Source: Octopus sinensis
Taxonomy: Eukaryota
Length of the DNA: 64,000 bases
Reading direction: 5' to 3'
Assembly (NCBI RefSeq): GCF_006345805.1
Contig: NC_043014.1
Location: forward strand, 36,456,001-36,520,000
Shown: positions 5,737 through 64,000 of the stretch, in pieces
Layout: the number at the start of each line of letters is the position of its first letter
Position numbering within the stretch: the first letter of the stretch is position 1
Made by a program: the position numbers and the translations under genes
Notes under the pieces: model-generated
What the model was told of the DNA's origin: nothing
Databases searched by the model: none
Seen by the model: the letters and a program-made list of their open reading frames with translations, nothing else

Positions 5737-5788
5737 ATCAACAATGTGTTAGTTATGATGTTACTGATGTCTTCTTACACTTCGGCTT
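5737..5788 (+). CDS. Ig-GPI gene copy 1, exon 2 (signal peptide core ...VMMLLMSSYTSA); one base short, frameshifted as assembled
   Basis: Pyrimidine tract plus AAG acceptor and phase-1 donor T|GTAAGT. It is 52 nt versus 53 nt in copies 2/3 (atgtgttagtt vs atgttgatagtt), giving TGT TAG in the exon-1 frame. Confidence 0.7.
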
Positions 5789-7730: not shown

Positions 7731-7773
<43 letters not shown>

Positions 7774-8080: not shown

Positions 8081-8195
<115 letters not shown>

Positions 8196-10040: not shown

Positions 10041-10249
10041 TATATTTAACAAATATAATATTGATGTCACAGTTCTATATTTAAGAGATGAGGAATTATG
10101 TACATTATTTACAATATTTACATTTGATGGATATTTGTCCTCATTTTGTTTGTTGTTAACACAACGTTTCGGCTGATATACCCTCCGGCCTTCATAAGGT
10201 TTCAAATTTCCCCAAGACACCTGATGATGGCTGGAGGGTATATCAGCCC

Positions 10250-11301: not shown

Positions 11302-11334
<33 letters not shown>

Positions 11335-11797: not shown

Positions 11798-12079
11798 TCA
11801 TTTCTTCCACCCTCTTGACAATATTCCATAAATCGTCTTCAAAGGCCTCCAAATTGCAGTTTGGTGGGGGAAATTTCTTCGTCTGAAAGTTCTTTTAAAA
11901 ACTTCAGTATCTTTTTTATGTGGGTTATTTTCTTTTATAAAATCCTTTTCATGGTAAAAAGCCACCCAACGGATTCTATGAATGAATTCAAAAGTCTTAT
12001 TAATCAGATCCTTCATGAAATCCTTTCTAGGTGGAATAGGAAAGTCTTTTAAAGATAAGTGAATCGGTAATTTCTCCAT
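11798..12079 (-). mobile_element. Penelope-like element ORF N-terminal fragment (copy 1 only)
   Basis: LSLKDFPIPPRKDFMKDLINKTFEFIHRIRWVAFY resembles the SLKNIPIP...RMRWKAFF N-terminus of invertebrate Penelope-like ORFs (recognised from memory). Confidence 0.6.
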
Positions 12080-13219
12080 TGAGACCAGCGAAAATATGTA
12101 TTAATATTACTTAAATAATATACAAATATATTATTATAAATCAAACTAAGAAAAAGAACCATTTCAATCAATATATAATAAACATTGATTTATGATGCTA
12201 TTCTCCTCTGATAAACCAAGTAAATTTGTGTTACTTTCTTATTTACTAAAACTAAAGTTTATATTAATACGAATAAATAAATTAGAACAATTATTATATA
12301 TAATTATATATAATTTTGAACAATTTTGCATATATGAATGTTTCTTGTAGACCCTATAAAATTTAGCATATATCATCATATGTTCTTTCGAACTTGTATA
12401 TACACATAAAAACTTATGTGTACACTACGGTAGTAGTTGAATAATATTCTTAACGTAGCTTTTTGTTGCAGTTGGCGTCTTCCAAGTAGTCTCACTAATT
12501 CACTTTTAATCCAAATCAAATTTAGTTTTTAAAATTATGTTTGACTAGTGATAAGCTACATTTAGACATAAAATACTTAAAATCTGGTGCAGTAGAACAA
12601 AAGAGAAAAAGTGTATAGACGAAACTGGTTGATTGACGGGTAATAAAGCCCGACATCGGCATTTTGAATCCACACCATTCTTTTAATTTTGAACAAGAAT
12701 TATTATATTGATATTAATATGAAAGGAAATGTTAAAGGAATATATTGGTAAAGGTTTCGTAAAATGTTATCCATTAGAAAAAGGTTATTAATTTTAATTC
12801 AGAAATTTGTATCAATTTTTGCGCGATATTAAAGGGACTAGACATGTATGAACTAAACTATTTCTTAGTTGCACACACAACAAAAGATAAACGACAACAC
12901 AAATCAATACAAAATGTTCTATTTATTTTCTTTAGTATAAATTACTTTTTATAAATAAATGAATTTTTTGCTTAACTTTTTGTAGTGTGGCTTTTTAAAG
13001 TCCATTTTTGAATAATTTACTTTAACAACAAGATTATTTGATAAAAATATTCAAATATTTTTTATATTTTGTCTCTATGAGCAGTATTCTATCATGTTGT
13101 AGGGCTGTTCAGAAAAGGCAAATGACAAAAATTCTAATATTTTAAGACACTTGCTTCCCAGCTGTATGGCTGGGAAGCAAGCGTCTTACAGTGACTCCTA
13201 GAGAGAGAGCAAGAGAGAG

Positions 13220-13256
<37 letters not shown>

Positions 13257-13488
13257 GAGAGAGAGAGAGAAAGAGAGTGAGTGAGGCAGAAATATTTCGA
13301 TAAATAAATGCATAGATATGCATGCATATATACTAATGTATAGATGTATCAACCAATATATCTATATATATAAATTTGTCTCTCTCTTTCTATATATGAT
13401 ATACATGTATGTATGTATGAATGTATGCATATATATATATTTACGGGGACACACACGGACTTACACATACACACACACACATATATAC

Positions 13489-13541
<53 letters not shown>

Positions 13542-13553
13542 TATACATATAAA

Positions 13554-13599
<46 letters not shown>

Positions 13600-13854
13600 T
13601 ATACATATATTTATATATATACATATATATACATATATTTATATGTATATATATGTGTGTGTGTGTGTATGTGTAAGTCCGTGTGTGTGTCCGTAAATAC
13701 ATACTTATGTATCAAGATATTTTCAACTGAGACGTTAGAACCGTATTTAATAATAAATATCAAAAACTAACTGCAAAGTTTTATTTGTGGATAGATGTAA
13801 TCCGTATTCAAAACAACCGTTATTTTTATTGGTTCTCTTTTTCCTACTTCTGTC

Positions 13855-14040
13855 ATTCTTCTTCTTCTTCTTCTTCTTCTTCTTCTTCTTCTTCTTCTTC
13901 TTCTTCTTCTTCTTCTTCTTCTTCTTTTTCTTCTTCTTCTTCTTTTTTTCTTCTTCTTCTTTTTTCTTTCTTCTTCTTCTTCTTCTTCTTCTTCTTCTTC
14001 TTCTTCTTCTTCTTCTTCTTCTTCTTCTTCTTCTTCTTCT
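13855..14040. repeat. (TTC)n tract upstream of the Ig1 acceptor (counterparts about 45800-46095 and 62925-63123)
   Basis: Direct reading. Confidence 0.97.
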
Positions 14041-14103
14041 ATAGTTACATTTATATATTTTTTATAACATCTATATCTGATCTATGATTTTTTTTCTATG
14101 CAG

Positions 14104-14436
14104 TTATTGAGATTGCAGATGTGTTACCTTCAAGCAATATTGATTTTGAAAACAGAACATTCTTAACTATAAAATGTCGGTATGCTATAGAAAATCTCCT
14201 TCAGTTTTTTCTCGTGCGAAATCACAGTGAAGTTATTGTTCAAATCTATTATCAAAAAAAGACACGAAGTTTTGCGGTTGTAAGCAGGAGAAAGGGTTTT
14301 GACTGTACTGTACCTAAAGTACCTGGAGATAAGAAAGGTGTGATTACCTGCTCGAAACATTATCCCTCTTGTGAGGATGCGACATACTACAAATGTTCAA
14401 CATATAAAGAATCCTCAAAATCTAGACTTGTAAGAG
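14104..14436 (+). CDS. Ig-GPI gene copy 1, exon 3: V-like Ig domain (Ig1)
   Basis: ttttttctatgcag acceptor, G|GTCAGT donor, 333-nt symmetric phase 1-1 exon, open frame. B-strand LTIKC and F-strand EDATYYKC (D-x3-Y-x-C) motifs. Overlaps ORF 14121-14618. Confidence 0.87.
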
Positions 14437-14559
14437 GTCAGTTTACTCGTTCTATTTTTACTTCCGTTTCTTGTTTTGCACGTATTCAACTCCATTGTCT
14501 TTATTTTTATTTCTATTGCGTGTTTCTATTGCACTATCGAACACAAGTTTCATCCAGTC

Positions 14560-14900
14560 AGGTCAATTGCCCAGGCCAGCCTGACTACCTCTCTCCATCA
14601 CTCCTGATCTTCCATTAGTGTTTTTAGGCCTTCAACTTGGCATCCAACATCTTCTGCAAGCTGTTGTATATATGTCTTCCGTGGTCTTCCAGTCGCTGTG
14701 GTACCGTGATTTGGTGCCCACAACAACTCCTTACTCACAAGTTTTTCTTTACTTCTCCAGCAATGGTCAGCATAAACCCAATGTCCGCTCTTAGATGATT
14801 GATGAGAAAGTTGATACATTCCCATATAACCTTTGTTTTGCTGGGTGCTCCCTCCATTAAATGTAGGGCACTGCACGTAACATTCTGGTGTAGGTACCGT
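14560..14900 (-). mobile_element. RTE/RTEX-type LINE 3' fragment in the Ig1-Ig2 intron (counterparts about 46620-46940 and 63650-63980)
   Basis: YADHCWRSKEKLVSKELLWAPNHGTTATGRPRKTYIQQLAEDVGC resembles the AGHCWRS...GRPRKTY C-terminus of RTE-related ORF2. Confidence 0.75.
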
Positions 14901-14939
14901 CCAGCATGCACTTAAGTCCCTCTCTTTCTTTTCTCTCTT

Positions 14940-15066
14940 TTACTTATTTCAGTCATTTGACAGCGGCCATGCTGGAGCACCGCCTTTAGTCGAGCAAATC
15001 AACACCGGGACTTATTCTTTGTAAGCCCAGTACTTATTCTATTGGTCTCTTTTGCCGAACCGCCAA
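14940..15066 (-). mobile_element. SINE family B, 3' fragment (counterpart about 46985-47115)
   Basis: ttcagtcatttgacagcggccatgctggagcaccgcc...gccgaaccgc. Confidence 0.75.
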
Positions 15067-15477
15067 GTGCATGTCTGTATATGCATGCATGAATGTATGT
15101 AAATATGTTTGCGTATGTGAATATATCTGTATCTATATATGTGTCCACATATTCATACATGCGCACACACACACATACATACACGCACACACGCAAATAT
15201 ATATAATTGCACACAAATACATGCTTATGTGTAAGTAAATATACACGTGTTTGAATGTGTCATTCATCTGTTGTGGAGTTATTGCTAGTCTTTGGTTCCA
15301 CACAGCCTTAGCACTGCTTACACAGTTAACCACTTCTAAGCAACAGTTCCCAAAGTCCAGGATTAACAATAATTGGAGTGTTGTCAAATGTTTTAGTCTT
15401 GTATGAAGATTGTAGTTTACATTAGTGAAACTACTCTTTTATTGTGAGGCCCTTTGTTCGAAGATAAGCATATTTCG

Positions 15478-15680
15478 ATTCTCTTTACTCTTTTTACTCT
15501 TTTATTTGTTTCAGTCATTTGACTGCGGCCATGCTGGCGCACCGCCTTTAGTCGAGCAAATCGACCCAGGGTCTTATTCTTTGTAAGCCCAGTACATATT
15601 CTATCGGTATCTTTTGCCGAACCGCTAAGTGACGGGGACGTAAATAAAACAGCATCGGTTGTCAAGCAATGCTAGGGGGA

Positions 15681-15760
<80 letters not shown>

Positions 15761-15920
15761 CGACAGGCTTCTTTCAGTTTCCGTCTACCAAATCCACTCA
15801 CAAGGCATTAGTCGGCCCGGGGCTATAGCAGAAGAAACTTGCCCAAGATGCCACGCAGTGGGACTGAACCCCGAACCATGTGGTTGGTTAGCAAGCTACT
15901 TACCACACAGCCACTCCCTG
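15478..15920 (-). mobile_element. SINE family B, full length, abutting the Ig2 acceptor (counterpart about 47525-47980)
   Basis: Reverse complement of the 10250-10680 type; head ends about 30 nt before 15952. Confidence 0.85.
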
Positions 15921-15951
15921 GCCTATTCGCTTTTGTTTTTTTTCTTTTCAG

Positions 15952-16260
15952 TGAGATCTTTCATTAAGAAACTTGAATTTCTTAACCCGCCCGCTGAAGT
16001 AAACAAGCTAGCGATCTTCAGATGTTCAGCATACATCGGTGCACCTTTTGGCGCTACTGACTTTTTATGGAGTCATGAGACAAAACACTACAATTGGATA
16101 AATGTGAGTCAAGTGCATGTTCGACCGCATGGAAAGTGTTTATCTCCAGCAGTGTCAATTAAGAAAATCGTTATAAGAGAGGGGGACATTGGTAACTCAT
16201 GTTCCGTCTCATGTTCCGTATACAGTGAATCACGCACTCTACAGCTCACCAGCAAAACAG
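15952..16260 (+). CDS. Ig-GPI gene copy 1, exon 4: C2/I-like Ig domain (Ig2)
   Basis: tttcttttcag acceptor, CAG|GTAAAC donor, 309-nt phase 1-1 exon. IFRCSA...FLWS...VSCSV gives the Cys-Trp-Cys Ig core. Overlaps ORF 15669-16319. Confidence 0.87.
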
Positions 16261-16786
16261 GTAAACAAATTTTCTTTGTGTTATCTTCCTTAACGCCTTT
16301 ATATATTCTTGTTCATTAATATCTCCTGATACAATATTTCTGGTTAAATTACACCTTCCAGTAAATTTGTACATCCACTCACGGTTATATTGACAATTAT
16401 ATTTATCCTTGAAAGGTATATCATTACGATTAACCAAATTTATATAGTTTCTTTTTTAAGATTCTGGAGATATTTAGTTGATATAAGAAGCTGCATCCTT
16501 TAAATGCACTCTATATGACATGGTTTGCATAAAGTCCTCCTTATGGCGGAAATTGTAGTGAAAAGGTCCGTACAGCACGGAAAAGCGGACTTTCTCATTA
16601 TAAATACATACACATGCACGCTTGCACGTGTACACGTACCCACGCAGGAACGCACGAACACGCACACACACATGCATACACACACGGACACACTATACAC
16701 ACAGTCGTAGAGAAATGGTGCACCCCGTCCCACGTGGCAAAGTGGTATGACTCAGCCACTATAAAGTCAGCAATCATTTGTTGTTT

Positions 16787-22564: not shown

Positions 22565-22597
22565 GTACTGAGCAGAAAGCAATCAGAGACAATGCAG
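22565..22597 (+). CDS. Ig-GPI gene copy 1, exon 5: 33-nt stalk microexon (GTEQKAIRDNA)
   Basis: atttttatttctag acceptor, CAG|GTATCT donor, symmetric phase 1, in frame between Ig2 and the terminal exon. Confidence 0.62.
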
Positions 22598-23841: not shown

Positions 23842-23921
23842 ATAAATTATCTGATGCAAATATTATTACTAAGATTTTGAAATTTGCAGCAACACTGCTT
23901 GTTATTGGCCATTTTCATTAA
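23842..23921 (+). CDS. Ig-GPI gene copy 1, exon 6: terminal exon with GPI-anchor-like signal (DKLSDANIITKILKFAATLLVIGHFH*)
   Basis: Strong acceptor ttttttttactttctattacag, phase-1 entry, small-residue cluster S-D-A-N, hydrophobic C-terminal stretch, TAA at 23919-23921. No canonical AATAAA seen nearby. Confidence 0.65.
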
Positions 23922-37555: not shown

Positions 37556-37608
37556 ATCAATAATGTTGATAGTTATGATGTTACTGATGTCTTCTTACAC
37601 TTCGGCCT
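37556..37608 (+). CDS. Ig-GPI gene copy 2, exon 2 (signal peptide core, intact)
   Basis: 53 nt, AAG acceptor, phase-1 T|GTAAGT donor. Encodes SIMLIVMMLLMSSYTSA; the ATG at 37563 could also initiate. Confidence 0.75.
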
Positions 37609-46157: not shown

Positions 46158-46490
46158 TTATTGAGATTGCAGATGTGTTTCCTTCAAGCAATATTGATTT
46201 TGCACACGCAACATTCTTAACTATAAAATGTCGGTATGATATAGAAAATCTTCTTATGTTTTTTCTCGTGCGAAATCACAGTGAAATTATTGTTCGAATC
46301 AATTTTCAATTGAAGACACGAATTTTTGAGGTAGTAACCAGTAGAAAGGGTTTTGACTGTACTATACCTACATTACCTGTACGTAAGAAAGGTGTGATTA
46401 CCTGCTCGAAACGTTATCCCTCTTGTGAGGATGCGACATACTACAAATGTTCAGCAAATAAAGAATCTTCAAAATCTAGAGTTGTAAGAG
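46158..46490 (+). CDS. Ig-GPI gene copy 2, exon 3: V-like Ig1 (intact)
   Basis: Same splice sites as copy 1, 333 nt, open frame, all five Cys conserved, 87/111 aa identical to copy 1. Confidence 0.88.
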
Positions 46491-48011: not shown

Positions 48012-48317
48012 TGAGATCTTTCATTAAGAAACTTGAATTTCTTAACCCGCCCGCTGAAGTAAACAAGCTAGCGATCTTCAGATGTTCAGCATACATCGGT
48101 GCACCTTTTGGCGCTACTGACTTTTTATGGAGTCATGAGACAAAACACCACAATTGGATAAATGTGAATGAAGTGCATGTTCGACCTCATGGAAAGTGTT
48201 TATCTCCAGCAGTGTCACTTAAGAAATTCGTTATAAGAGAGGGGGACATTGGTAACTCAAGCGTCTCATGTTCTGTATACAGTGAATCACGCACTCTACA
48301 GCTCACCAGCAAAACAG
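48012..48317 (+). CDS. Ig-GPI gene copy 2, exon 4: Ig2 (intact; reads through to TAA at 48376 if the donor is unused)
   Basis: 306-nt phase 1-1 exon, about 94% aa identical to copy 1. Exons 5-6 are not assembled (expected in or behind the gap). Confidence 0.87.
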
Positions 48318-50689: not shown

Positions 50690-50789
50690 NNNNNNNNNNN
50701 NNNNNNNNNNNNNNNNNNNNNNNNNNNNNNNNNNNNNNNNNNNNNNNNNNNNNNNNNNNNNNNNNNNNNNNNNNNNNNNNNNNNNNNNN
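50690..50789. other. Assembly gap (100 N, true size unknown)
   Basis: Run of exactly 100 N. Confidence 1.
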
Positions 50790-50876
50790 AGCAATACCCT
50801 ATTTCTACTACTCTATTTCTTTGTAAGACACTAACCTTTCATCATCAGATATCGGGCCACCTCCTCCAATGGTTCC

Positions 50877-50910
<34 letters not shown>

Positions 50911-51729
50911 ACCGTTGGCGATTTTTTTTGCTCTATCTTCCCATCTCTGGATCTTTCCTTCTCCAATGTTTCCGATGAAGAGCTCCGCTCGAAACTTTAA
51001 GCTCTCCTTCTTTCCTTCTTTCCTGAGCGTCCAATAATACTATATTTGTTCCACGTCCTCGCGTTGTTGTGTTTTTTTGTGCTTTCTTGTTTGGATTAAC
51101 TCTCTCTATATATATATATACAAATAAATAAATATATATATATATATATATATATGTATAAATAGAGGAATTTATCTCTTTATGTTTACATATGCGAATT
51201 ATTCTGTAGCCATGATAAAACTCCGAGAAAAAAAGCAGGGTTCAGAGTAACGATACAGAGAAAAGGCATATGGGAGTATACAAAGAGTAAACCACGTCTA
51301 TATACGCACATACAATTATGCACGCGCACACACACGCCTATATGCGACATACCCGCACACGTCTATACACTCACACACGCCATTAAGGAAACTATACTCT
51401 ATGAAACATTTAGAGAAAATTAGAGACCTGATTATGCGCATAAGATGGAAGATATTATCCATATAAATCAAATGGGGTGATTATAATCGCCCCATTTGAT
51501 TTATATGGATAATACCTTACTAAATTCTGGTACCTGTATATATATATATATAATATATTATAATGATAAAATTAGGGAGTATGGCTCCAAACTTACAGGG
51601 AAAAATTAGATTTAGGATTAAATCAAATTTCACAGTATAAATATATAAAATATGAATTAGAGATAAAACCACTATTAGGCAACTCAAACAGTTTGAGTTG
51701 CCTAATAGTGGTTTTATCTCTAATTCATA

Positions 51730-51805
<76 letters not shown>

Positions 51806-52464
51806 AATGTAAAAAAATACAAACTGGGACAAGAACATGAAACATTTAGAAGTCGATTATGATAACGATAGTCACTGTGGTTTGAACAATTAGCTTAAGG
51901 TCCACTCCACTTCAATAGCGAAATTCTTTCCCAGCCTTCGAACATTCTTTCAATCAACGTACCCTTCCCACTCCACTTGTTCCCTACCTACTATTCCTTT
52001 AACCCTTCTCTTCCTACTATCTATCTTTGACGTCAATTCTTCTAACGATTTTTTAAAAATCACTCATTATCGTTTTGTTTACATGTAGGCAGTCATCGAA
52101 ATTTTTGTTTGTCTTTTTGTCGAGAGAGGCTCCCTTTCTTTTTTGATGAGAAGACTGCATAATGCACCCTTTATTCATTTGGAATGAAACCATGTTGTCT
52201 TCGAAACATATGTCGAGAGTAAAGGAATTTGCTAACATCTTCGTTCGACCCCATTCTTTCATTTATTCATATATAACACACAAATTTCTGCACATGAACC
52301 CGGAGTTTCTACCGTTGAACAGGTCGCTTCAACCGTGTTTCTGAGTTTCTGACGTGAATTTGCTACCCTGGTTTCGGTTCAACGAATTTTCCATGCTTAC
52401 GATAAACGTAGGATAATTCATTCACTATTTAAATATATATATATATATAATACATATATATATA

Positions 52465-52532
<68 letters not shown>

Positions 52533-54268
52533 TATATAAATTGTAGCCAACCTGCCGACTACTTTAATATGCTTGTATATCCAACCAAATACAGTGTTGA
52601 TCAGCAGGTAAATGACCACTACGAAGCAACAAGTGTGAGTGGCAGAAATTTCAAAATTATGTTTGCAGGACCGAACGGTCAGTGGTAAGGTGATGCTGGT
52701 TGACGGCCAGGCTGGAGATAACTCTCGTTGTTGGCAAAGCAGTTGCCAGATTCAGCATCATTGACGTATTGTAACAATAACCTACAGATAAACCTGCTCG
52801 CTTACCGAATATATTTATGGTAGGAGGAATTGAGAACTTTCAAAGGATCCAGTGGAGGGGAACGCCAATCTACTAAGCAGAGTTATGAGATATTCTGTGA
52901 AGAAAGAAGAAACAGTGAGCTTGTTGCTAAGCACAATGTCAGAATTCGAAGAGATGAACGTACCGGATCTTTGCGGTTTTGAACGGCAGTTTTTTCTTGC
53001 GGTGTCATATGAAATTGTCACCCATAATTATGTCCCTGGTATCGATCTGTTTTAGGTTTAGGTTAGTTAGGTTAGGGTTGGGGTGGGGGGAAGGGTACCT
53101 TATTTCTTCAGAAATGTAAATAAACCAATCTGATTCTTAAACGAGGGACAGATTCATACGGCACATAATGTTTTTACCTCAATAGATGTCATTGATTGGT
53201 TGAAATTGCAGAAATTGAAGAAGAGAAAAAACAACAAATAACCTACAAACTATAGAATTGTCTCAATAAAGCCAAGAGAAAAAGATGTTTTATAAACACA
53301 TTCTACCAGTATAAGAAGTTAAAAGGTGTTTGTTGCGTGGAAATTATTTTTAAAAACTGCCGTTCAAACCGAAAAGATCCCGTACCGTTCATTTTCAATC
53401 CCTTCTGCTTCACCAGTAAGTTACTTGTGGTATGTGTAGCAGCAATCCAGACTGCTCGGGGTGTGGAGTAAATCCTTTTTTTCTCAAATGCCTGGATGAC
53501 CTTACAATAAAGAAGGAGCTTCGATAAGGTAGAAATCCTGGTAAGCCTACCACTCCCGACGATTCCCTTTGGCATGAATCAACCGAGTCGGAAGAATGCT
53601 TAGGAAGCTGTTCAAGCAGCTAGGTCAGCAAGGTCAGCTAGGTCATCCAGTGTCCAGTGTAGCGCCATATTGAAAAATCAATTAGAAAAATACCAAACAA
53701 ATGTAGTAAGAAAAAGAAAATGTCTTGACTCTTTTTTCTCTCTCTCTCTCTTTCTCTCCTCCTACGTTCTTTCTCTATATCTTTGTCCCTTTCACTCCCT
53801 CCCTCTCACTTTTCCATGACGTTCTTCTTAATCTTTGACTGTAACTCCTTCTTGCCAATCTTCCTTCTTCTCTCCCTTTCTTACTTTCATATCCTTATAA
53901 CTTTCCCTCAATTTCCTCTCCCGCGTCCTAAGTCGGCGTCTTTTTCTTAATCACAATACTTCTTTCACCCAATCTCTCAATACTTCGAAATTCTCTATCT
54001 TTCTTTTCATCTTTGTATGTGTATATGTGTGAGTGTGTGTTCTGGCGTGCGCATGTGCGTGCGTGCTTGTGTACGTGTGTGTGTACTTAAGTTACTGTTT
54101 TTAAGAATATTTACTTCCGGTTTTCTAGCGTTAGTGACATCTATATCTCTATCTATATCTCTTTATCCATCTCTCTCTATTTATCTCAATCTCTCTATAT
54201 TTCTCTATCTATATCTCACTATCTATCTGTCTATATTTTATCTATCTACCTATCTACCTACCTATCTG

Positions 54269-54337
<69 letters not shown>

Positions 54338-54672
54338 TTGTCTATATCTTTTCTAACTATCTATCTATCTATCTATGTACCTACCTATCTATCTAAGTTT
54401 TACCTGCCTTCTCGATGCAGAAAAGAGAAAGAGAGAGAAACAAACAGACAGAGAGAGGGAGAAAAAGGAAGATAGAGAGAGAAAAAGAATGAAACAGAAA
54501 GATGGGACTTTCAGTTCACTCACACTTCAAGTTGGACTTGCGTTTTTCTCTCTATTTCTGTTATGTTTAGCCATTTCGACTACGCTATTTGTAAGAGATA
54601 TCTTTTCGTAAAATTTCTGCTTTCTGGAAGCCGACAATCATTTCTCCTCCTGCCTTATACCTGTCGCACAAG

Positions 54673-54725
54673 ATCAATAATGTTGATAGTTATGATGTTA
54701 CTGATGTCTTCTTACACTTCGGCCT
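54673..54725 (+). CDS. Ig-GPI gene copy 3, exon 2 (signal peptide core, intact)
   Basis: Identical to copy 2 exon 2. Exon 1 is absent (would fall in the gap). Confidence 0.7.
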
Positions 54726-54829
54726 GTAAGTTAATATTAAGAAACATAATATTTTTTCGGTTACAACACTGAATCTTCTTCTCTTAGATAACATGCTTTC
54801 ATCTTTGAACGACACAGTATACACACGCA

Positions 54830-54900
<71 letters not shown>

Positions 54901-55736
54901 CCACAGACAGACAAACGCACACATACACATACACACACGCACACACACACCAACACATTATCAACACACCGACATACACTTTTCAACAGCGTCACCTCAA
55001 ATACCTATTTCTTTACTGCCCACAAGGGGCTACACAGAAAGAGGGGACAAACAAGGACAGACATAGGTATTAAGTCGATTACATCGACCCCAGTGCGAAA
55101 GATGATAGCCAAAGTCGACCTCGGCGGAATTTGAACTCAGACCTTAACGGCAGACGAAATACGGCTAAGCATTTCACCCGTCGTTTTAACGTTTCTGCCA
55201 GCTCGCCACGAATAGCATAATACGAACAACACAACACACTGTTTAATTCAGTACACACACCACACACTGTTTAATTCAGTACACACACCACACACCATCA
55301 TGCACACTCTCACACCCTCACAAACACATAATATCTGAACACAGAGAATATATAGATACACACGCAACACGCATAAACATGCATTACACGCATTGACACG
55401 GATAACATTCGCTCACACAAAATACACACGTCCATATGCACACCACACACAGGGGAATACACAAAACGCATATTCTCCACACAACACATACTCTAGGTTA
55501 ATTTTACACACAAACACACACAAACACACACACATACATACATGCATACGTACGTACATACATACCTACATATACATACATACATACATACATACAGACA
55601 TACAGACATACATACGTACATACATACATATCTCGTTCTTTCTGTGTTTGTAAAAGTTTATAAAGACAGTATTTTTCAACTGATTTCCTCCAAACTGCGA
55701 ACGTACATTACTTATGTTCCAGGGATGACTTTAGAC

Positions 55737-56033
55737 CAGTGGTTTTCAACCAGGGTTCCGCGGAACCTTAGCGTTCCACCAGTACATTCCAGGGGTTCCG
55801 CAAGAAGTTACAAAACTGCTAGGATCTTTTCATTTTGAAAGCCAGATATTTCAGTTTTTTTCTAATGAAGTAAATAACGCAAGAAGTTACAAAACTGCTA
55901 AAATCCGCTGTAATTTTTAATCTCCTGTGCAGATATGTGTGCATAAGACTATTAAATTATGGCACAGGGGTTCCTCGAGCCAGTGGAATGTTTCCTTGGG
56001 GTTCCGCTCCAGCAAAAAGTTTGAAAAGCACTG
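55737..56033. mobile_element. hAT-family MITE (copy 3 counterpart)
   Basis: Same termini and CTTTAGAC TSD. Confidence 0.85.
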
Positions 56034-56543
56034 CTTTAGACTCTTAAAATTTCTCACATAATCAGTAACGTGCCCCTTGGAGCAGAAAAATACATACATC
56101 CGTACGCACACACTCACACCAACCAGTACATGGAATGCATGTCACTTCACATAATGTACACACTGACACACAGAAGTCCACATAATTTTCAGCTAACCCA
56201 CTCACACACTAGCATCCATTCACATAAACACATTCACAGACACCGTCCTCCCAAACACACATGCGCTTGTGCACCTAAGCTCCTTGGATATACCGTTATC
56301 GTTTATGATTATTATCTCGCTTTCATTCAACCTCTATTTTCCGGTCATCTCGCCATGTTGGACAATTTTTCTCTGCACTTCCATTTCTTTCCCAATTTTC
56401 TTATTCTTTCACAGTTTTCATCATTCTCTCTCCATTTTTTTTCCTCTTAATCCTTTCTGTCGAAAAGCATAGGCTCGAGACTTAAAAGACTTTTGCTTTC
56501 ATCCCGAGCGTTAAAATAATACACCTGCTGTCTTCGTCTTCTG

Positions 56544-56682
<139 letters not shown>

Positions 56683-56946
56683 TAGCCGGTGTTTTTCAAA
56701 CGATGAGTAGCTTTGGGTAAACCATGGATCGTTTTGTTCTCTTACTTTGTTATCACCTTATAATCATCTCATAATAATGACTTTTATTACTCGTATTACT
56801 ACCTCAGTCAATCTAAATGTATATATTTGTCGTTACCTGTCATAAATAGCCTTTTTCTATTTGCAATGTGCATTTTCGTAGATTTTTCATATTTACCCTT
56901 ACATTTCCACGTGTATTTTATCTTTTCTTTTTATTACATATTTCTA

Positions 56947-57007
<61 letters not shown>

Positions 57008-57942
57008 TAAAGTTTACCAAAATTTAGATCCAGATGAATATGGTACTTAAGTTAAAGGCACCAGAATTTGGTATGGTATTATCCATATAAATCAAATGGG
57101 GTGATTATAATCAAAATAAGCAACAAGCATATCCAAGGTAGTGTAGTACAATCGTTTCATGCTACTTCATTTTATTATACACTCTAAGTATTACGTCAGT
57201 TGTTAAATGTCGAGCAATCATCAGCCACACATAGAAGTTTTTTTAAAATTAAATGGACAATGTACATATTTATACTTATTTCATTTGCCAACATTACAAA
57301 GAGGGTAGATATATAGACAGAGAGGTTAATCTCATCATTAAGAACGTGGTGGTAGTATGTCCTTCTCCATTGGTAGATTTGTTATCACTGAGTTCACTTT
57401 GCTATTTAGATCTATCAGTGAGGAGGGGGTTTCTTATCTTGGTTCAATGAAGACAAACAAGAATTTTCTATTTATAGATAGAGGAAGGGGTAGTACAAAT
57501 GTCAAAACCATAAATCCATCCTTATTATGAAGAATTTAACTTAAGCATATTTGAATGTATTTTAGCAAACGCTTGTAGGCTGAAGTGTATGGTTTTGACA
57601 TTTGTACTACCCTTTCCTCTATCTATAAATGTTAACATTTGACATTATTGACCGAGGTTACCGGGGGTATTTACGAAGGCTTTTCCTTCCACGGATAAAC
57701 CCTATTTACTTTCCCCCTTACACTTTACATCATCACATTACTATGATACACGATCCCTATTGATCGTTATTTTTCTTTCTTTCACTTTTACGATCCCTTT
57801 TGATCGAAAACCTACCCCCATTTTTTCTTCCCCCCCCCCCATAAAGAACAGCTCTACTTTGTAATCTGTCCCATCTATGTGCAGCCCTGTGTGGCTAATA
57901 AAGAAACATATCTAACTATCTAGCTATCTTTCTATCCATTCA

Positions 57943-58024
<82 letters not shown>

Positions 58025-58028
<4 letters not shown>

Positions 58029-60242
58029 ATGGTTTGGCTAGTGCAGTATTTTTTGACCCACTTTGTGTGAGTGACGCCTGCAGGTCTGGAGTCAAAAACG
58101 AAAGGCCTTTGTTTACTGGAAGAGGAATGGCTTTTGGAGGGACCTTGGCCTTGTGCAGTCAATTGGAGGTCGTTCTAGACACCCTTGAAGAAGAGGAAGA
58201 GGAAAGTAGTGAGAAAGATAGAGTAAGGAATCTCAGAGCAGATAGAGAGGATGACAGCAGCAGCGCCGATAAAGGTATGTGATGCTGTACCCAAGAAATC
58301 TTGTGATTTGGAACCCGTAGAGGTTGAGGAAACCGAAGGCCTGGACTGTTGAAGGTGTTATGGCTGATGCTGTTGTTCCCTGTCTGGAGCCCTTGGCATC
58401 TCGACCCCTGTCTCTCGGAGCTCAGGACGAAGAGCTGGCGAGGTCTGGGGCAGATATCGCTGAGTCCGAGGTCCGGATCTGTCTGTGTGTGGTGGTCGCG
58501 GCAGGTGTTATGCCGTGTGCGAGTCCTTTGGTGTCTGGGCCCTGTCTCTCGGGGCTCAGAAGGACTGTATGGTTTCCACTGTGGAGAGGCCACAGGCGTG
58601 GATGGACTGGCGGCCGAGCGTGTGTGTTGTGAAGCCTTCGGTGCAGAAGCTGGTGAGGAGGAAGAGGACCAAGCCCGTTGACGAGGCGAGACGGCTACGA
58701 ACGGTGGTGGGTCCACCAAGACCAGGAAGACTGCTTCAGTGTTGGGTGAGCTGTGTGGTTGATGGCTGCTTGGGGCCGGTGGAGCCCGACAGGCAGTGCA
58801 TAGTAAAAGCTCAATTGAGGGTCGGGTGGACCCTAGTAAAAGCAGAAGCTGGCAGAGCGCTGGCTGGGTCGGCCGATCGTTTGGAAGTGGCATAGGCGAT
58901 TTGTAGAAGGCAAACCGAGGAATCGTGCCAGATGGCGAACCAGTGGTGGGGCCAGTTCTGCCGATACGGCAACGCAGTTGAAGGAGATGGTGGCCCACTG
59001 ATGCAGTTGCGGAAGCGGTCCGCAAGGAGTCGCTGGTGCTTGGTTGGCACTCGGGTGAGCTCTGTATTCGATGGTTGCGTGGGGCTGGTGGAGCCCAACA
59101 GGCAGTGCATAGTAAGGGCTCAATTGAGGGTCGGCTGGACCCTGGTGGAGGCAGAAGTTGACAGAGTGCTGGTTGGGTCGGCCGATTTATTGAAGGCTGC
59201 GCAGGCGATTTGTAGAGGGCAAATCGTGGAACTGCGCCGGACGGTGAACCAGCGGCGGGGACAGTTCTGCCAGTACGGCAATGCAGTTGAAGGAGATGGT
59301 GGTCCACCGATGCAGTTGCGGAAGAAGGAACCGTTGGTGAAAAGCGCAGGAGGACGTTGGTCGCGAGGGTTGTCGGATGTTGGTCGCACAAACATGGCAG
59401 AGTGCTTCATCAACCAAGGCGGTCGTCGCTTGAGGAAGCAGCGAGGCCGGAGGAAAGTCCCAGTACGGCAGCGAAAGAGGAGATATCGGCGACAGGGAAC
59501 AGTGGAAAAGCGGAATGGTCCTGGTCGTCGGCGATAATTGCACGGAACGAAGACGGCACAGCAAGATGCTACGTGGGGTATAGAGCCCTGAGGAGGGTGG
59601 CCACTGTGAAGGATTGGCCGGACCCTGCCTGTGTGAAGGATTTGAGGAACTTCCTCGGACGGTGCGCCTATTGTAGGCGGCTTGTAGGAAGCTTGGCGGC
59701 CTTGGCAGAGGTGTTACCCGAGCCGCAGAGGGAAGGTGCCAACCTGTGGCCAGTGGTGAAGTGGTGGCCGGGGAGTGAGACCCCGGAAGAGAAACCACCC
59801 AAGGGGACCTCCAGTTCCTGGAACATCTGCTGGGGCTCGCCCTCAGAGGTGCGGGTTTGTTGTGCTTTTTGTCGGGTCGACAAAGCTTAGGTAGGGGGTA
59901 GTGTTATGGTTGGCTAGTGCAGTAGTTCTTGACCCACTTTGTGGGAGTGGCGCCTGCAGGTCTGGAGTCAAAAACGAAAGGCCTTTGTTTACTGAAGAGT
60001 AATGGCTTTTGGAGGAATCTTTGGCCTTGTGCGGTCGATTGGAGGTCGTTCTAGACACCCCTTGAAGGAGAGGAAGAGGAAAGTAGTGAGAAAGATAGAG
60101 TAAGGAATCTGAGAGCAGATAGAGAGGATGACAGCAGCAGCGCCGATAAAGATAGGGACATAGGACCAGGCGGGATAGAGAGAGTATAAGGCTAAGAGAC
60201 AGATTGAGGGTAGTGATAAAGACAGTTGGTATTCGGTCGTCA
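58025..60242 (+). mobile_element. Internally deleted Gypsy-type LTR retrotransposon (copy 3)
   Basis: Same structure; LTR starts at 58025 and 59902. Confidence 0.85.
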
Positions 60243-62295
60243 AAGCGAGTAGTTGGAATTTTGGGAGCAGGCGTTTGGGATGCAGGAGCTTGGCAAGTTG
60301 GAGTTACGGCACGGAGAGAGATATATACAGAGGAATAGGCGGCTGTTAGAGAGGAACTACAATATGGGACACTGGCTATTCAATTAGGAATTAAGGTATT
60401 TAATTGTATTGATACGTGCTACGATGTAAAGAGACTGTACAAGAAAAAAAGAAAGAAGAAAGAGAGAGAAAAAGAAGGACTCTGATGTAGTCGTTAAAGA
60501 CATTGAACTGTATATGACTTGTTGATGTGTTTTGAAATAGAACTGTGTTTTCGGACGTGTACCTTTGAAATGCTGATGTATTAACCTTGTTGTGTCGTTA
60601 CCGGACGGTTATATTGTTACTTGCATGTTTAAATGCTTTGATCTGTTGTATACCTGTATTGATTTGTTGTTTCCTTTAAATGCTTTGATCTGTGGTATAC
60701 CCGTATGATGTATTGAGTTGTCACGTGCATGTCCTCCTTTAAATGTATCTAAAATGTATTTGATGTAACAGTTGATTGTCATATAAACTAGTTGTTAAAT
60801 GTAAGCCAGTGGTGCCTTGCCTCTTTGTGTCTCTCTCGGTTGCCTCTGTATCTCTCTGTGCTGCTGCTGCTGTTGTTGCTGTCTCACCTCTCTCCTCTTT
60901 GTGTTCCGTGGCGAACTTGCCCGTTCGGGCGAGCGACGGCGGGTGATTCCGTAACAATATATATATATCTTTCATCGTTTGTCTTTTACTTACTTCAGTC
61001 ATTAGACTGCAGTCATGCTGGGGCACCGTCTTGAGATTTTAATCGATTGAATAGACCCCATTACTTATAATTTAAGCCTGGTACTTATTCTATCGGTCTC
61101 TTTTGTCAACCCCCTCTAAGTTACGGAGACGTAAACACACCAACACCAGTTGTCAAGTGGTGATGGGGAGACAAACACAGACATATACACATAGATATAT
61201 ATATATACATATATACATAGACATATACATATATATACATATATATGCGACAGGCTTCTTTCAGTTTCCGTCTACCAAAGAACCATTTCAATCAATATCT
61301 AATAAACATTGATTTATGATGCTATTCTCCTCTGATAAACCAAGTAAATTTGTGTTACTTTCTTATTTACTAAGACTAAAGTTTATATTAATACGAATAA
61401 ATAAATTAGAACAATTACTATATATAATTATATAAAATTTTGAACAATTTTGCATATATGAATGTTTCTTGTAGACCCTATAAAATTTAGCATATATCAT
61501 CATATGTTCTTTCGAACTTGTATATACACATAAAAAACTTATGTGTACACTACGGTAGTAGTTGAATAATATTCTTAACGTAGCTTTTTGTTGCAGTTGG
61601 CGTCTTCCAAGTAGTCTCACTAATTCACTTTAAATCCAAATCAAATTTAGTTTTTAAAATTATGTTTGACTTGTGATAAGCTACATTTAGACATAAAATA
61701 CTTAAAGTCTGGTGCAGTAGAACAAAAGAGAAAAAGTATAGACCAAACTGGTTGACTGACGGGTAATAAAGCCCGACATCGGCATTTTGAATCCACACCA
61801 TTCTTTTAATTTTGATCAAGAATTATTATATTGATATTAATATGAAAGGAAATGTTAAAGGAATATATTGGTAAAGGTTTCGTAAAATGTTATCCATTAG
61901 AAAAAAGTTATTAATTTCAATTCTCAAATTTGTATCAATTTTTGCGTGATATTAAAGGGACTAGACATGTATGAACTAAACTATTTCTTAGTTGCACACA
62001 CAAGAAAATACAAACGACAACACAAATCAATACAAAGTGTTCTATTTATTTTCTTTAGTATAAATTACTTTTATAAAAGTGAAGTGAATTTTTTTGCTTA
62101 AATTTTTGTGTAGTGTGGCTTTTAACGTCCATTTTGAATATAATTATTTTAATAACAAGATTATTTGATAAAAATATTAAGTATTCTATCATGTTGTAGG
62201 GCTGTTCAGAAAAGGCAAATGACAAAAATTCTAATATTTTAAGACACTTGCTTCCCAGCTATTGGCTGGGAAGCAAGCGTCTTACAGTGACTCCT

Positions 62296-62341
<46 letters not shown>

Positions 62342-62490
62342 TGAGGCAGAAAGATTTCAATAAATAAATGCATAGATATGCATGCATATATGCTAATGTA
62401 TAGATGTATCAACCAATATATCTATATATATAAATTTGTCTCTCTCTTTCTATATATGATATACATGTATGTATGTATGAATGTATGCAT

Positions 62491-62560
<70 letters not shown>

Positions 62561-63032
62561 CATATATTTATATGTATATATGTGTGTGTGTGTGTATGTG
62601 TAAGTCCGTGTGTGTGTCCGTAATAAATACTTATGTATCAAGATATTTTTAACTGAGACGTTAGAACCATATTAATACTTGAAGAGTTAAATTGTGTGCA
62701 TGTGCATATATTTACCACATTGATGATATCTATCACAGGTTTTTCATTGTGTTGATGAACTATTTTCTATGATTAATAAAACTGTCGGTATTTTGACGAC
62801 ACAGGTATGTTAGTATAATAATAAATATCAAAAACTAACTGCAAAGTTTTATTTGTGGATAGATGTAATCCGTATTCACAACAACCGTTATTTTTATTGG
62901 CTCTCTTTTTCCTACTTCTGTCATTCTTCTTCTTCTTCTTTTTCTTCTTCTTCTTCTTCTTTTCTTCTTCTTCTTCTTCTTCTTCTTCTTCTTCTTCTTC
63001 TTCTTCTTCTTCTTTTCTTCTTCTTCTTCTAC

Positions 63033-63064
<32 letters not shown>

Positions 63065-63186
63065 CTTCTTCTTCTTCTTTTTTCTTTTCTTCTTCTTCTT
63101 CTTCTTCTTCTTCTTCTTCTTCCATAGTTACATTTATATATTTTTTATGACATCTATCTCTGATCTATGATTTTTTTTCTATGCAG

Positions 63187-63523
63187 TTATTGAGATTGCA
63201 GATGTGTTTCCTTCAAGCAATATTGATTTTGCACACGCAACATTCTTAACTATAAAATGTCGGTATGATATAGAAAATCTTCTTATGTTTTTTCTCGTGC
63301 GAAATCACAGTGAAATTATTGTTGTTCGAATCAATTTTCAAAATTGAAGACACGAATTTTGAGGTAGTAACCAGTAGAAAGGGTTTTGACTGTACTATAC
63401 CTACATTACCTGTACGTAAGAAAGGTGTGATTACCTGCTCGAAACGTTATCCCTCTTGTGAGGATGCGACATACTACAAATGTTCAGCAAATAAAGAATC
63501 TTCAAAATCTAGAGTTGTAAGAG
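63187..63523 (+). pseudogene. Ig-GPI gene copy 3, exon 3 (Ig1), frameshifted as assembled
   Basis: 337 nt. Identical to copy 2 except +3 (gtt), +2 (aa) and -1 (t) indels clustered at about 63320-63360; may be sequencing error. Confidence 0.65.
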
Positions 63524-64000
63524 GTCAGTTTACTCGTTCTATTTTTACTTCCGTTTCTTTTTTTGCACGTATTCAATTCCATTATCATTATTTTTATTTC
63601 TATTGTGTGTTTCTATTGCACTATCGAACACAAGTTTCATCCAGTCATGTCAATTGCCAAGGCCAGCCTGACTACCTCTCTCCATCACTCCCGATCTTCC
63701 ATTAGTGTTTTTAGGTCTTCAACTTGGCATCCAACATCTTCTGCAAGCTGTTGTATATATGTCTTCCGTGGTCTTCCAGTCGCTGTAGTACCGTGATTTC
63801 GTGCCCACAACAACTCGTTACTCACAAGTTCTTCTTTACTTCTCCAGCAATGGTCAGCAAAACCCAATGTCCGCTCTTAGATGATTGATGAGAAAGTTGA
63901 TACATTCCCATATAACCTTTGTTTAGTTGGGTGCTCCCTCCATTAAATGTTGGGCACTGCACGTAACATTCTGGTGTAGGTACCGTCCAGCATGCACTTA

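What the first reader, a model, noticed from the sequence alone, without database searches (positions are those of the whole stretch)
14104..14436. Distal Ig1 domain shows a strong excess of amino-acid change between paralogs
Manual codon alignment of 14104-14436 with 46158-46490 gave 24 non-synonymous codons (29 nt) and 3 synonymous ones, 32/333 nt (about 9.6%). A non-coding control (about 61-490 vs 31922-32350) gave about 14 substitutions in about 430 nt (about 3%). Ig2 has only 5 non-synonymous and 2 synonymous changes plus one small indel. All five Cys and the EDATYYKC motif are invariant, while changes cluster at ENR/AHA, QIYYQK/RINFQL, SFAVVSR/IFEVVTS, KVPGD/TLPVR and TY/AN. Inference: diversifying selection on a ligand-binding face, as in allorecognition (Hydractinia Alr-like), immune, gamete or neuronal-identity receptors.
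Basis: partly seen in the sequence, partly recalled or inferred. Interest (0 to 1): 0.9.

Follow-up and report, generated by a model that had tools for sequence, protein, structure and literature searches.

The report
Fast-evolving octopus surface receptor domain
The outermost antibody-like domain of a tandem, octopus-only family of small cell-surface proteins has changed amino acids more than twice as fast as the neighbouring introns, a sign of selection for diversity in a recognition receptor whose ligand is unknown.

Summary
Exon 14104-14436 and exon 46158-46490 align without gaps and differ at 32/333 nt: 24 amino-acid changes and about 3.7 synonymous changes. Adjacent intron differs by 4.7-4.8%, and the whole repeat unit by 4.35%.

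The A/B pair alone is not significant on its own synonymous sites (omega 1.6-2.2, P=0.13). It is significant against the intron rate (P=2.5e-4).

With seven intact paralogs from the same Octopus sinensis cluster:
- dN exceeds dS in all 21 pairs.
- One-ratio omega is 3.4-4.3, and omega=1 is rejected (P=2.6e-4 to 1.9e-5).
- pN is 2.3x the intron rate (CI 1.7-3.0).
- Ig2 is about neutral on average.

Low dS excludes import from distant paralogs. Variant patches are, however, clearly shuffled among close paralogs.

AlphaFold and Foldseek show a V-type Ig domain followed by a C-type Ig domain. A short signal peptide and a GPI-like tail flank them. Variation concentrates in the CDR-like loops and the C'-C'' hairpin.

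The family was found only in octopods, and no paper on it was found.

Copy C is a re-representation of B across a 100-N scaffold gap.

Function (immune, self-recognition, gamete or neuronal) remains open.

The parts
5744..5788 (+). Gene A exon 1, the signal peptide (..VLVMMLLMSSYTSA, donor GTAAGT). Compared with B, C and the O. vulgaris orthologs it has a 1-nt deletion right after the ancestral ATG (5744). The first in-frame ATG is at 5755, giving MMLLMSSYTSA.
   Evidence: tblastn with P0004; sequence reading; O. vulgaris SP exons are intact.
14104..14436 (+). Gene A exon 2, the V-type Ig domain ('Ig1'), phase 1-1. This is the exon of the finding.
   Evidence: AG/GT boundaries and open frame; AF2 pLDDT 91.2 with V-set fold hits.
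15952..16260 (+). Gene A exon 3, the second Ig domain ('Ig2', C-type), phase 1-1.
   Evidence: two-domain model and V+C fold hits.
22565..22597 (+). Gene A exon 4, the stalk (GTEQKAIRDNA), phase 1-1.
   Evidence: tblastn 100% to the P0001/P0003 tail; boundaries.
23842..23921 (+). Gene A exon 5. It encodes DKLSDANIITKILKFAATLLVIGHFH plus the stop. This is a C-terminal hydrophobic tail with no cytoplasmic part, read as a GPI-anchor-like signal.
   Evidence: Every close paralog has its own copy 7-10 kb downstream of Ig2.
37563..37608 (+). Gene B exon 1, the signal peptide MLIVMMLLMSSYTSA.
46158..46490 (+). Gene B exon 2, the V-type Ig domain. This is the paralog compared in the finding.
48012..48317 (+). 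Gene B exon 3, Ig2. It is one codon shorter than A's: NS-SVSC instead of NSCSVSC.
50690..50789 (.). A 100-N scaffold gap exactly at the B/C junction.
50790..64000 (+). Copy C, a second representation of B 33691-46965. It shows 0.3-0.7% mismatches and many 1-3 nt indels. Its SP exon is at 54680-54725 and its Ig1 exon at 63187-63523. That Ig1 exon has 0 substitutions and 3 indels relative to B.
13860..14040 (+). A long (CTT)n tract directly upstream of the Ig1 acceptor. It is present in all copies.

Best explanation
WHAT THE WINDOW HOLDS. The window is from Octopus sinensis chromosome-scale scaffold C18, 36.456-36.520 Mb. It holds two neighbouring genes, A and B, plus an assembly re-copy of B called C. 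They belong to an octopod-restricted, tandemly arrayed family of small surface proteins.

GENE ARCHITECTURE.
- a short signal peptide
- a V-type Ig domain, one phase 1-1 exon
- a C-type Ig domain, one phase 1-1 exon
- an 11-residue stalk exon
- a hydrophobic C-terminal tail with no cytoplasmic part, inferred to be replaced by a GPI anchor

WHAT IS SHOWN.
- Within the youngest subfamily (seven intact genes spread over about 215 kb), amino-acid-changing substitutions in the V domain accumulated about 2.3 times faster than neutral intron substitutions. They also accumulated 3-4 times faster than synonymous ones. This is positive, diversifying selection.
- The changes concentrate in the BC, C'C'', DE and FG loops and in the C'-C'' hairpin.
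- Short variant patches have been exchanged between paralogs, so the genes carry different combinations of a shared pool of variants.
- Once formed, each paralog seems stable. The O. sinensis / O. vulgaris orthologs differ by only 1-2 residues.

WHAT IS INFERRED.
- The V domain's membrane-distal end binds a ligand that itself changes quickly. That ligand could be a pathogen or symbiont surface, or a conspecific or self surface molecule.
- Duplication plus selection builds a germline panel of specificities.
- Having no cytoplasmic tail, the proteins would signal through a partner or act as adhesion or decoy molecules.
For: GENE MODEL

DIVERGENCE, A VERSUS B
- Exon 9.6% against adjacent intron 4.7-4.8% and whole unit 4.35%.
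- Nonsynonymous sites against intron rate: P=2.5e-4.

SEVEN PARALOGS
- dN 0.074-0.187, dS 0-0.084, intron K 0.02-0.06. Omega >1 in 21 of 21 pairs, 12 of them with P<0.05.
- 52 of 110 residues vary, but only 7 codons show synonymous variation.
- Nucleotide tree length: Ig1 0.398, introns 0.185, Ig2 0.181.
- Codon ML M0 omega 3.4/4.3, omega=1 rejected.
- pN/p_intron 2.31, CI 1.72-3.03. pS/p_intron 0.65, so there is no hypermutation.

STRUCTURE
- AF2 pLDDT 86.6 and 91.2. Foldseek hits are antibody light chains, TCR beta, butyrophilins, the VGSC beta4 V domain, nanobodies and nectin-2 D1.
- Sub-threshold Pfam V-set hit.
- Variation is enriched in the top loops plus the C'C'' hairpin, P=1.4e-5.

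EXCHANGE BETWEEN PARALOGS
- g1/g2 have identical Ig1, yet 13 substitutions in Ig2 with 0.7% intron divergence.

INDEPENDENT ASSEMBLY
- The O. vulgaris A ortholog differs from A by 1 residue and the g6 ortholog from g6 by 2.

TAXONOMIC RANGE
- 46 representatives at E<1e-3 among 1.84 billion. All true hits sampled are Octopus spp. or Argonauta hians.
Against: - The A/B pair alone is not significant on synonymous sites (P=0.13).
- The strong M2a-vs-M1a LRT (2dl 45-59) is unreliable, because recombination among paralogs is evident.
- The codon models were my own implementation, not codeml or HyPhy.
- Gene A has a 1-nt deletion just after its start codon. This may be a real defect or one of this assembly's many indel errors.
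- No expression, anchoring or binding data were available.
- The GPI signal was judged by eye only.
- Loop 'top/bottom' assignment rests on canonical V-set topology plus the AF2 secondary structure. No 3-D coordinates were available.
- Three putative haplotype pairs show no Ig1 substitution. There is therefore no sign of strong allelic polymorphism, although power is low.
Confidence: 0.75

Rival explanations
1. The exon-confined A/B divergence comes from exon-scale gene conversion, not from selection on A or B. One gene's Ig1 exon, or patches of it, was overwritten from another cluster member.
For: - The Ig1 tree disagrees with the intron tree. Introns group gA+g6 at 98%, while Ig1 groups g6+gB.
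- 154 of 325 site pairs fail the four-gamete test, and the PHI-like P is 0.002.
- B shares EIIVRI.FQLKTR with g6 and F..AHA with g3.
- g1/g2 give a clean example. Ig2 differs by 13 substitutions while the introns differ by 0.7% and Ig1 by 0.
Against: - Conversion only redistributes differences. It cannot create the family-wide excess of nonsynonymous over synonymous and intron change (omega 3.4-4.3; pN/p_intron 2.3).
- Donors outside the young subfamily are excluded, because exon dS (0-0.08) is no higher than intron divergence.
- A carries about eight private residues (E15, Y48, S60, K71, V72, G74, H85, Y100) found in no other O. sinensis paralog.
Confidence: 0.15
2. The cause is relaxed constraint. 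A and B would be decaying pseudogenes of a redundant family, and the amino-acid changes would be neutral.
For: - A has a frameshift right after its start codon.
- Copies g2, C, u1 and u2 have frame-breaking indels.
- Ig2 has omega about 1 on average.
- B has no 3' exons before the gap.
Against: - Neutral decay gives omega about 1 and pN about equal to the intron rate. Observed omega is significantly above 1, and pN is 2.3x the intron rate.
- All seven Ig1 and Ig2 exons keep open frames, splice sites, five Cys and the DATYY.C motif.
- Orthologs are nearly unchanged between the two species.
- The broken copies differ from intact ones by indels only, at the same density as in the introns. They also lie at a scaffold gap or on an unplaced haplotig. 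This points to assembly error.
- B's missing tail is explained by the gap. The next tail exon follows C.
Confidence: 0.06
3. The cause is an assembly or sequencing artefact. The exon differences would reflect errors or mis-joined haplotypes in a repeat-rich long-read assembly.
For: The assembly does contain a false-duplication-like structure, with B/C lying across a 100-N gap. It also has many small indels.
Against: - The errors seen are indels, not substitutions.
- B and C agree at all 333 aligned exon positions.
- An independent O. vulgaris assembly reproduces the A-type exon with 1 amino-acid difference and the g6-type exon with 2.
Confidence: 0.02

Closest known systems
CEACAM / PSG family (mammalian IgSF)
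   Same: - Tandem, lineage-specific gene cluster.
- Membrane-distal V-like N domain under positive selection, with inter-paralog gene conversion.
- Several members are GPI-anchored and lack a cytoplasmic tail.
- Gene content differs between sister species.
   Different: - No detectable sequence homology. The family profile finds only octopod proteins.
- The octopus V domain has five Cys including the canonical B-F pair, whereas the CEACAM N domain lacks that disulfide (from general knowledge).
- The ligand and the selective agent are unknown here.
Butyrophilin / B7 and antibody light-chain-type V+C ectodomains
   Same: These are the best structural matches of the two-domain model. Each has a V domain followed by a C-type domain.
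   Different: - Sequence identity is only 10-17% and TM 0.3-0.5 for the pair of domains.
- Butyrophilins are transmembrane with B30.2 tails. Here the tail is GPI-like.
Hydractinia Alr1/Alr2 allorecognition genes
   Same: Invertebrate IgSF genes in a cluster, with a highly variable membrane-distal V-like domain.
   Different: - Alr proteins are transmembrane with cytoplasmic tails, and their hallmark is extreme allelic polymorphism (general knowledge).
- Here the tail is GPI-like.
- The three putative haplotype pairs show 0 substitutions in Ig1.
- No homology was found.
Amphioxus VCBPs and gastropod FREPs (invertebrate immune-type IgSF)
   Same: Germline-expanded, diversified V-type or IgSF domains in animals without adaptive immunity.
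   Different: - VCBPs carry a chitin-binding domain and FREPs a fibrinogen domain.
- The octopus proteins have only V + C Ig domains plus an anchor.
- An immune role is untested.
Small GPI-anchored IgSF adhesion or wiring molecules (CD48/CD58, Thy-1, IgLON, Drosophila Dpr/DIP)
   Same: Two- or three-Ig ectodomain on a lipid anchor, forming multigene families that build interaction codes.
   Different: Those families are mostly under purifying selection and are conserved across phyla. This one is octopod-only and has omega >1.

Membership tests
Immunoglobulin superfamily, V-set domain (Ig1) | Two-sheet beta sandwich with the additional C' and C'' strands | tested here: met
   - The AF2 model of A's exon has pLDDT 91.2.
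- Its strands are A2-7, B19-27, C33-38, C'42-50, C''55-61, D65-67, E77-85 and F94-98.
- Top Foldseek hits are V domains (VGSC beta4, nanobodies, VH/VL, nectin-2 D1), with prob 1.0 and TM 0.5-0.6.
Immunoglobulin superfamily, V-set domain (Ig1) | Canonical B-strand Cys and F-strand D-x-(A/G)-x-Y-x-C motif | tested here: met
   TIKC (C24) and EDATYYKC (C97) are present in A, B and the close paralogs. C24 is invariant and C97 is at least 90% conserved across 21 family members.
Immunoglobulin superfamily, V-set domain (Ig1) | Invariant Trp in strand C | tested here: not met
   Strand C reads QFFLVR, with Phe in place of Trp, in all close paralogs.
Immunoglobulin superfamily, V-set domain (Ig1) | Pfam V-set/ig/I-set HMM above the gathering score | tested here: not met
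   - The exon translations give no Ig hit.
- Full-length P0004 scores 14.5 bits against V-set (cut-off 26), E=0.042.
- The PDB profile search finds nothing significant.
Gene under positive diversifying selection | dN/dS significantly above 1 and dN above a neutral reference | tested here: met
   - M0 omega is 3.4/4.3, and omega=1 is rejected at P=2.6e-4 / 1.9e-5.
- pN/p_intron is 2.31, CI 1.72-3.03.
- The A/B pair alone gives P=0.13.
GPI-anchored protein | N-terminal signal peptide plus a C-terminal small-residue site, spacer and hydrophobic tail, with no cytoplasmic domain | tested here: inconclusive
   - The sequence shows MLIVMMLLMSSYTSA at the N terminus and ..DKLSDANIITKILKFAATLLVIGHFH-stop at the C terminus.
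- No GPI predictor or PI-PLC assay was available.
- The hydrophobic stretch is rather short.
Hydractinia Alr-type allorecognition determinant | Extreme allelic polymorphism of the distal domain | tested here: not met
   Putative haplotype pairs B/C, g4/u1 and g5/u2 have 0 substitutions in 333 nt of Ig1, against 0.1-1.35% in the introns. This is one individual, so power is low.
Hydractinia Alr-type allorecognition determinant | Sequence homology; transmembrane protein with a cytoplasmic tail | tested here: not met
   The profile search finds only octopod proteins. The C terminus has no cytoplasmic part.
CEACAM-like decoy or pathogen-receptor family | Binding of pathogen adhesins to the N domain; paired inhibitory and decoy members | not testable with these tools
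   The resemblance is only evolutionary and architectural.

The most novel reading that the evidence does not exclude
Octopods would possess a private, germline-diversified V-type receptor repertoire. It comprises 40 or more V-domain exons in two clusters on one chromosome. Its CDR-like loops are driven apart by positive selection and reshuffled by inter-paralog conversion. It would serve non-self or self recognition. Two candidate roles are a haemocyte or epithelial pathogen-recognition panel, or the molecular basis of the skin-sucker self-recognition known from octopus behaviour.
Probability: 0.2. Interest if true: 0.85.

Novelty: new member of a known kind. Interest (0 to 1): 0.58.

Why it matters
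Cephalopods have complex tissues, long-lived large bodies and no adaptive immunity. Their known lineage-specific expansions are protocadherins, zinc fingers and chemotactile receptors.

A second, undescribed expansion is reported here: small V+C Ig surface proteins restricted to octopods. Their ligand-facing domain shows omega of 3-4 and patchwork exchange between paralogs. This gives a concrete candidate set for molecular recognition in these animals, whether immune, self/non-self, gamete or neuronal.

The phenomenon itself is familiar from vertebrate CEACAM, KIR and LILR families: positive selection on the distal Ig domain of a tandem family. The advance is therefore a new family and lineage, not a new principle.

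The case also shows how a scaffold-gap false duplication and indel errors can mimic pseudogenes in this assembly.

Tried and rejected
- Pfam on the exon translations found no Ig family. The Ig label had to be established by structure prediction.
Tail exons were mapped by coordinates only.
I folded P0004 with a family alignment, and A's exon alone, instead.
- Word-index homolog searches gave only 4-5 proteins. The exhaustive profile search was needed.
- A PDB sequence-profile search found nothing significant.
- Five literature searches found no description of the family or of its LOC identifiers.
- dN/dS among the more distant paralogs (30-47% identity) was not attempted, because synonymous sites would be saturated.
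- A mutational explanation (hypermutation or editing-like bias) was rejected. Exon pS is 0.65x the intron rate, and the exon spectrum is not transition- or A>G-biased (10 ts: 22 tv).
- My first pairwise Ig2 figures were wrong because of a frame slip in the alignment columns. They were redone.

Full report
1. WHAT IS AT THE COORDINATES

The window is eukaryotic, AT-rich and full of microsatellites. It is G000:C18:36456001-36520000 of a 2.72-Gb, 13,516-contig genome.

Positions 14104-14436 and 46158-46490 are AG/GT-bounded exons of 333 nt in phase 1-1. They align without gaps and differ at 32 positions, with 24 changed residues.

A self-comparison shows three copies of a 17-18 kb unit:
- A: 1-18551
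- B: 31862-50688
- C: 50790-64000

2. GENE MODEL

A protein search found O. vulgaris hypothetical proteins and O. bimaculoides LOC106880713 (P0004, 263 aa). Mapping these onto the window gives gene A:
- signal-peptide exon, 5744/5755-5788
- Ig1, 14104-14436
- Ig2, 15952-16260
- an 11-residue exon, 22565-22597
- a last exon, 23842-23921, encoding DKLSDANIITKILKFAATLLVIGHFH-stop

That last exon is a hydrophobic tail with no cytoplasmic part. I read it as a GPI-anchor signal. This is inference; no predictor was available.

Gene B has exons at 37563-37608, 46158-46490 and 48012-48317. It has no tail exons before copy C begins.

3. B AND C ARE PROBABLY ONE GENE

- A run of 100 N sits at 50690-50789, exactly at the B/C junction.
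- B and C differ by 0.3-0.7% substitutions in the two introns flanking Ig2 but by many 1-3 nt indels.
- In the Ig1 exon they differ by three indels and no substitution.
- The next tail exon lies downstream of C, at C18:36529180.
- The simplest reading is an un-merged contig overlap or haplotig.
- Contig C9019 likewise looks like a haplotig of the g4-g5 region. Its exon copies u1 and u2 differ from g4 and g5 by indels only.

4. THE FAMILY

- Searching the genome with the Ig1 translation gave 49 exon matches, 44 of them at E<0.02.
- Most lie in C18:36.05-36.88 Mb, with a second group at C18:6.40-6.56 Mb.
- Ig2 gave 26 matches.
- An exhaustive profile search of 1.84 billion representative proteins returned only 46 hits at E<1e-3.
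- The 20 hits I looked up were O. sinensis, O. vulgaris, O. bimaculoides or Argonauta hians. The only exceptions were two weak spurious hits, a WD40 protein and a titin-like protein.
- No paper mentioning the family or its LOC identifiers was found.

5. IS IT AN Ig DOMAIN?

- Pfam does not detect one above threshold. The best result is V-set at 14.5 bits against a cut-off of 26.
- No PDB sequence relative exists.
- AlphaFold2 with a 35-row family alignment gave a confident two-domain all-beta model (pLDDT 86.6).
- Its best Foldseek matches are V+C Ig molecules: antibody light chains, TCR beta and butyrophilins BTN2A1/BTN3A.
- A's Ig1 exon alone folded with pLDDT 91.2 and strands A, B, C, C', C'', D, E, F. 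It matched V-set domains at TM 0.5-0.6.
- The B-strand Cys and the F-strand DATYYKC are present. The strand-C Trp is replaced by Phe.

6. THE SELECTION TEST

For the A/B pair:
- NG86 gives Nd 28.3 over 257.7 sites and Sd 3.7 over 72.3 sites, so omega is 2.2.
- Other methods give omega 1.6-2.2.
- Fisher P is 0.13. The pair alone does not prove omega >1.

Against neutral references the exon stands out:
- The unit-wide mismatch rate is 4.35%. The 63 nt and 300 nt immediately flanking the exon differ by 4.8% and 4.7%.
- Nonsynonymous sites against flanking introns (165/3287) give P=2.5e-4.

I then took the eleven closest paralog units, seven of which have intact exons:
- Ig1 dN is 0.074-0.187, dS is 0-0.084 and intron K is 0.02-0.06.
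- Omega is at least 1.45 in all 21 pairs, and P<0.05 in 12 of them.
- 52 of 110 residues vary, but only 7 codons show any synonymous variation.
- Nucleotide tree lengths are 0.398 for Ig1, 0.185 for introns and 0.181 for Ig2.

My own Goldman-Yang F3x4 ML implementation gave the following:

| Exon | M0 omega | Test of omega=1 | M2a vs M1a |
|---|---|---|---|
| Ig1 | 3.4 (exon tree), 4.3 (intron tree) | rejected, P=2.6e-4 and 1.9e-5 | 2dl = 45-59 |
| Ig2 | 1.4-1.65 | not significant | P=0.005 to 1e-4 |

The Ig2 fit puts about 60% of sites at omega=0.

Bootstrap results:
- Ig1 pN/p_intron is 2.31 (CI 1.72-3.03).
- Ig2 pN/p_intron is 1.15 (CI 0.73-1.64).
- Ig1 pS/p_intron is 0.65, so the exon is not hypermutated.
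- The substitution spectrum is unremarkable.

7. GENE CONVERSION

- Exchange among the close paralogs is nevertheless real.
- Partition trees disagree.
- 154 of 325 informative site pairs in Ig1 fail the four-gamete test. A PHI-like permutation gives P=0.002 for Ig1 and 0.0002 for Ig2.
- g1 and g2 have identical Ig1 and 0.7% intron divergence, yet 13 substitutions in Ig2.
- The site-model LRT is therefore inflated. Part of the A/B difference may have been imported as patches.
- Conversion cannot generate the family-wide nonsynonymous excess.

8. WHERE THE CHANGES FALL

I used the AF2 strand boundaries and canonical V-set topology.

| Region | Variable residues | A/B differences |
|---|---|---|
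| BC, C'C'', DE and FG loops plus C'-C'' hairpin | 31 of 42 | 16 of 42 |
| Rest of the domain | 21 of 68 | 8 of 68 |
| Fisher P | 1.4e-5 | 0.0018 |

Some changes toggle N-glycosylation sequons. N16 (NRT) is present in A, g6, g1 and g4, and absent in B, g3 and g5. N50 and N81 in Ig2 also vary.

9. CROSS-SPECIES CHECK

Two O. vulgaris loci (L069 and L070, 130.7 kb when joined) hold orthologs in the same order: g5 tail, g6, A, then a recent A duplicate ('A2v'), then an orphan Ig2.
- Ortholog intron divergence is 0.8% for A and 2.0% for g6. Ig1 shows only 1 and 2 nonsynonymous differences respectively.
- The paralog differences therefore predate the species split, are reproduced in an independent assembly, and have since been stable.
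- A2v is 1.4-1.7% from A in the introns and already carries 6-7 nonsynonymous and 0-2 synonymous changes.
- O. vulgaris shows no B-type gene in this stretch. Gene content differs between the sibling species.

10. VERDICT

- The inference of diversifying selection on the membrane-distal V domain is supported once more paralogs and intron references are used.
- The function is open.
- The closest analogues in behaviour are vertebrate CEACAM-, KIR- and LILR-type clusters.
- Membership in any named family beyond 'IgSF V-set fold' is not supported.
- The Alr analogy is not supported by tail architecture, homology or the limited haplotype comparison.

Noticed in passing
window 50690-50789 and 50790-64000: A 100-N scaffold gap lies exactly between copies B and C. 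C repeats B 33691-46965 with about 0.6% mismatches and 141 gap openings. In the exons it differs by indels only. This is probably an un-merged contig overlap or haplotig, not a true tandem duplicate or pseudogene.
   Followed up: yes
window 5744-5760: Gene A's signal-peptide exon has a 1-nt deletion right after the ancestral ATG (ATGTGTTAG, against ATGTTGATAG in B/C and MLLVMM.. in O. vulgaris). That leaves only MMLLMSSYTSA in frame. It may be a real defect or an assembly indel error.
   Followed up: partly
window 18600-30400: Non-LTR retrotransposon fragments lie on both strands. Examples are RVT_1 at 27644-28357(-) and 19271-19843(-), and an endonuclease at 29334-30011(-). They surround gene A's exons 4 and 5. 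The whole stretch is shared at 97.5% with O. vulgaris, so the insertions are old.
   Followed up: partly
window 10253-10685 (+), 15491-15917 (-), 47541-47977 (-); partial copies at 43865-44160 and 60982-61279: A dispersed element of about 430 nt (86% identity between copies, SINE-like) is present in intron 1 and intron 2 of the genes.
   Followed up: no
window 40725-43126 and 57853-60243: A GC-rich insertion of about 2.4 kb is present in units B and C but not in A. It contains internal repeats and an 82-aa ORF (MTAAAPIKVC.., 41138-41383). The O. vulgaris annotation uses that ORF as a first exon (P0002). It has no Pfam match.
   Followed up: partly
L057/L058 (C18:36285900-36292100 and 36315100-36321300): Paralogs g1 and g2 have identical Ig1 exons apart from one 1-nt indel, and 0.7% intron divergence. 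Their Ig2 exons nevertheless differ by 13 substitutions plus a codon indel. g2's Ig2 is B-like. This is a clean exon-scale gene-conversion event.
   Followed up: partly
L018 (C3:157889027-157889311): A copy on another chromosome is identical in protein to the C18 gene at 36227896. It reads straight from Ig1 into Ig2 with no intron (..SKTFEVGSFIS..). This is a processed retrocopy, which implies germline expression of the parent gene.
   Followed up: no
L067/L068 (contig C9019): The unplaced 73-kb contig carries g4-like and g5-like genes in the same relative order, orientation and spacing as on C18. There are 0 substitutions in Ig1, and 0.1-1.35% in the introns, plus frame-breaking indels. It is probably an alternative haplotig with indel errors.
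   Followed up: partly
L069+L070 (O. vulgaris OX597833.1:44110192-44240884): Where O. sinensis has B(/C) after gene A, O. vulgaris has a recent duplicate of A. Its upstream half resembles B's upstream region and its downstream half resembles A, so it is chimeric. A duplicated pair of tail exons also follows the A ortholog. Gene content therefore differs between the sibling species.
   Followed up: partly
window 16197-16199 vs 48254-48258 (Ig2): The 3-nt indel in Ig2 adds or removes a cysteine: NSCSVSC in A, g6 and g1, against NS-SVSC in B, g3, g4 and g5. It also creates or removes an NSS glycosylation sequon. Ig1 has an odd number (5) of conserved Cys.
   Followed up: no
C18:36550293-36550598 (L066) and O. 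vulgaris L069 47150-47449: An orphan Ig2 exon with no detectable Ig1 or tail partner is conserved in position in both species.
   Followed up: no
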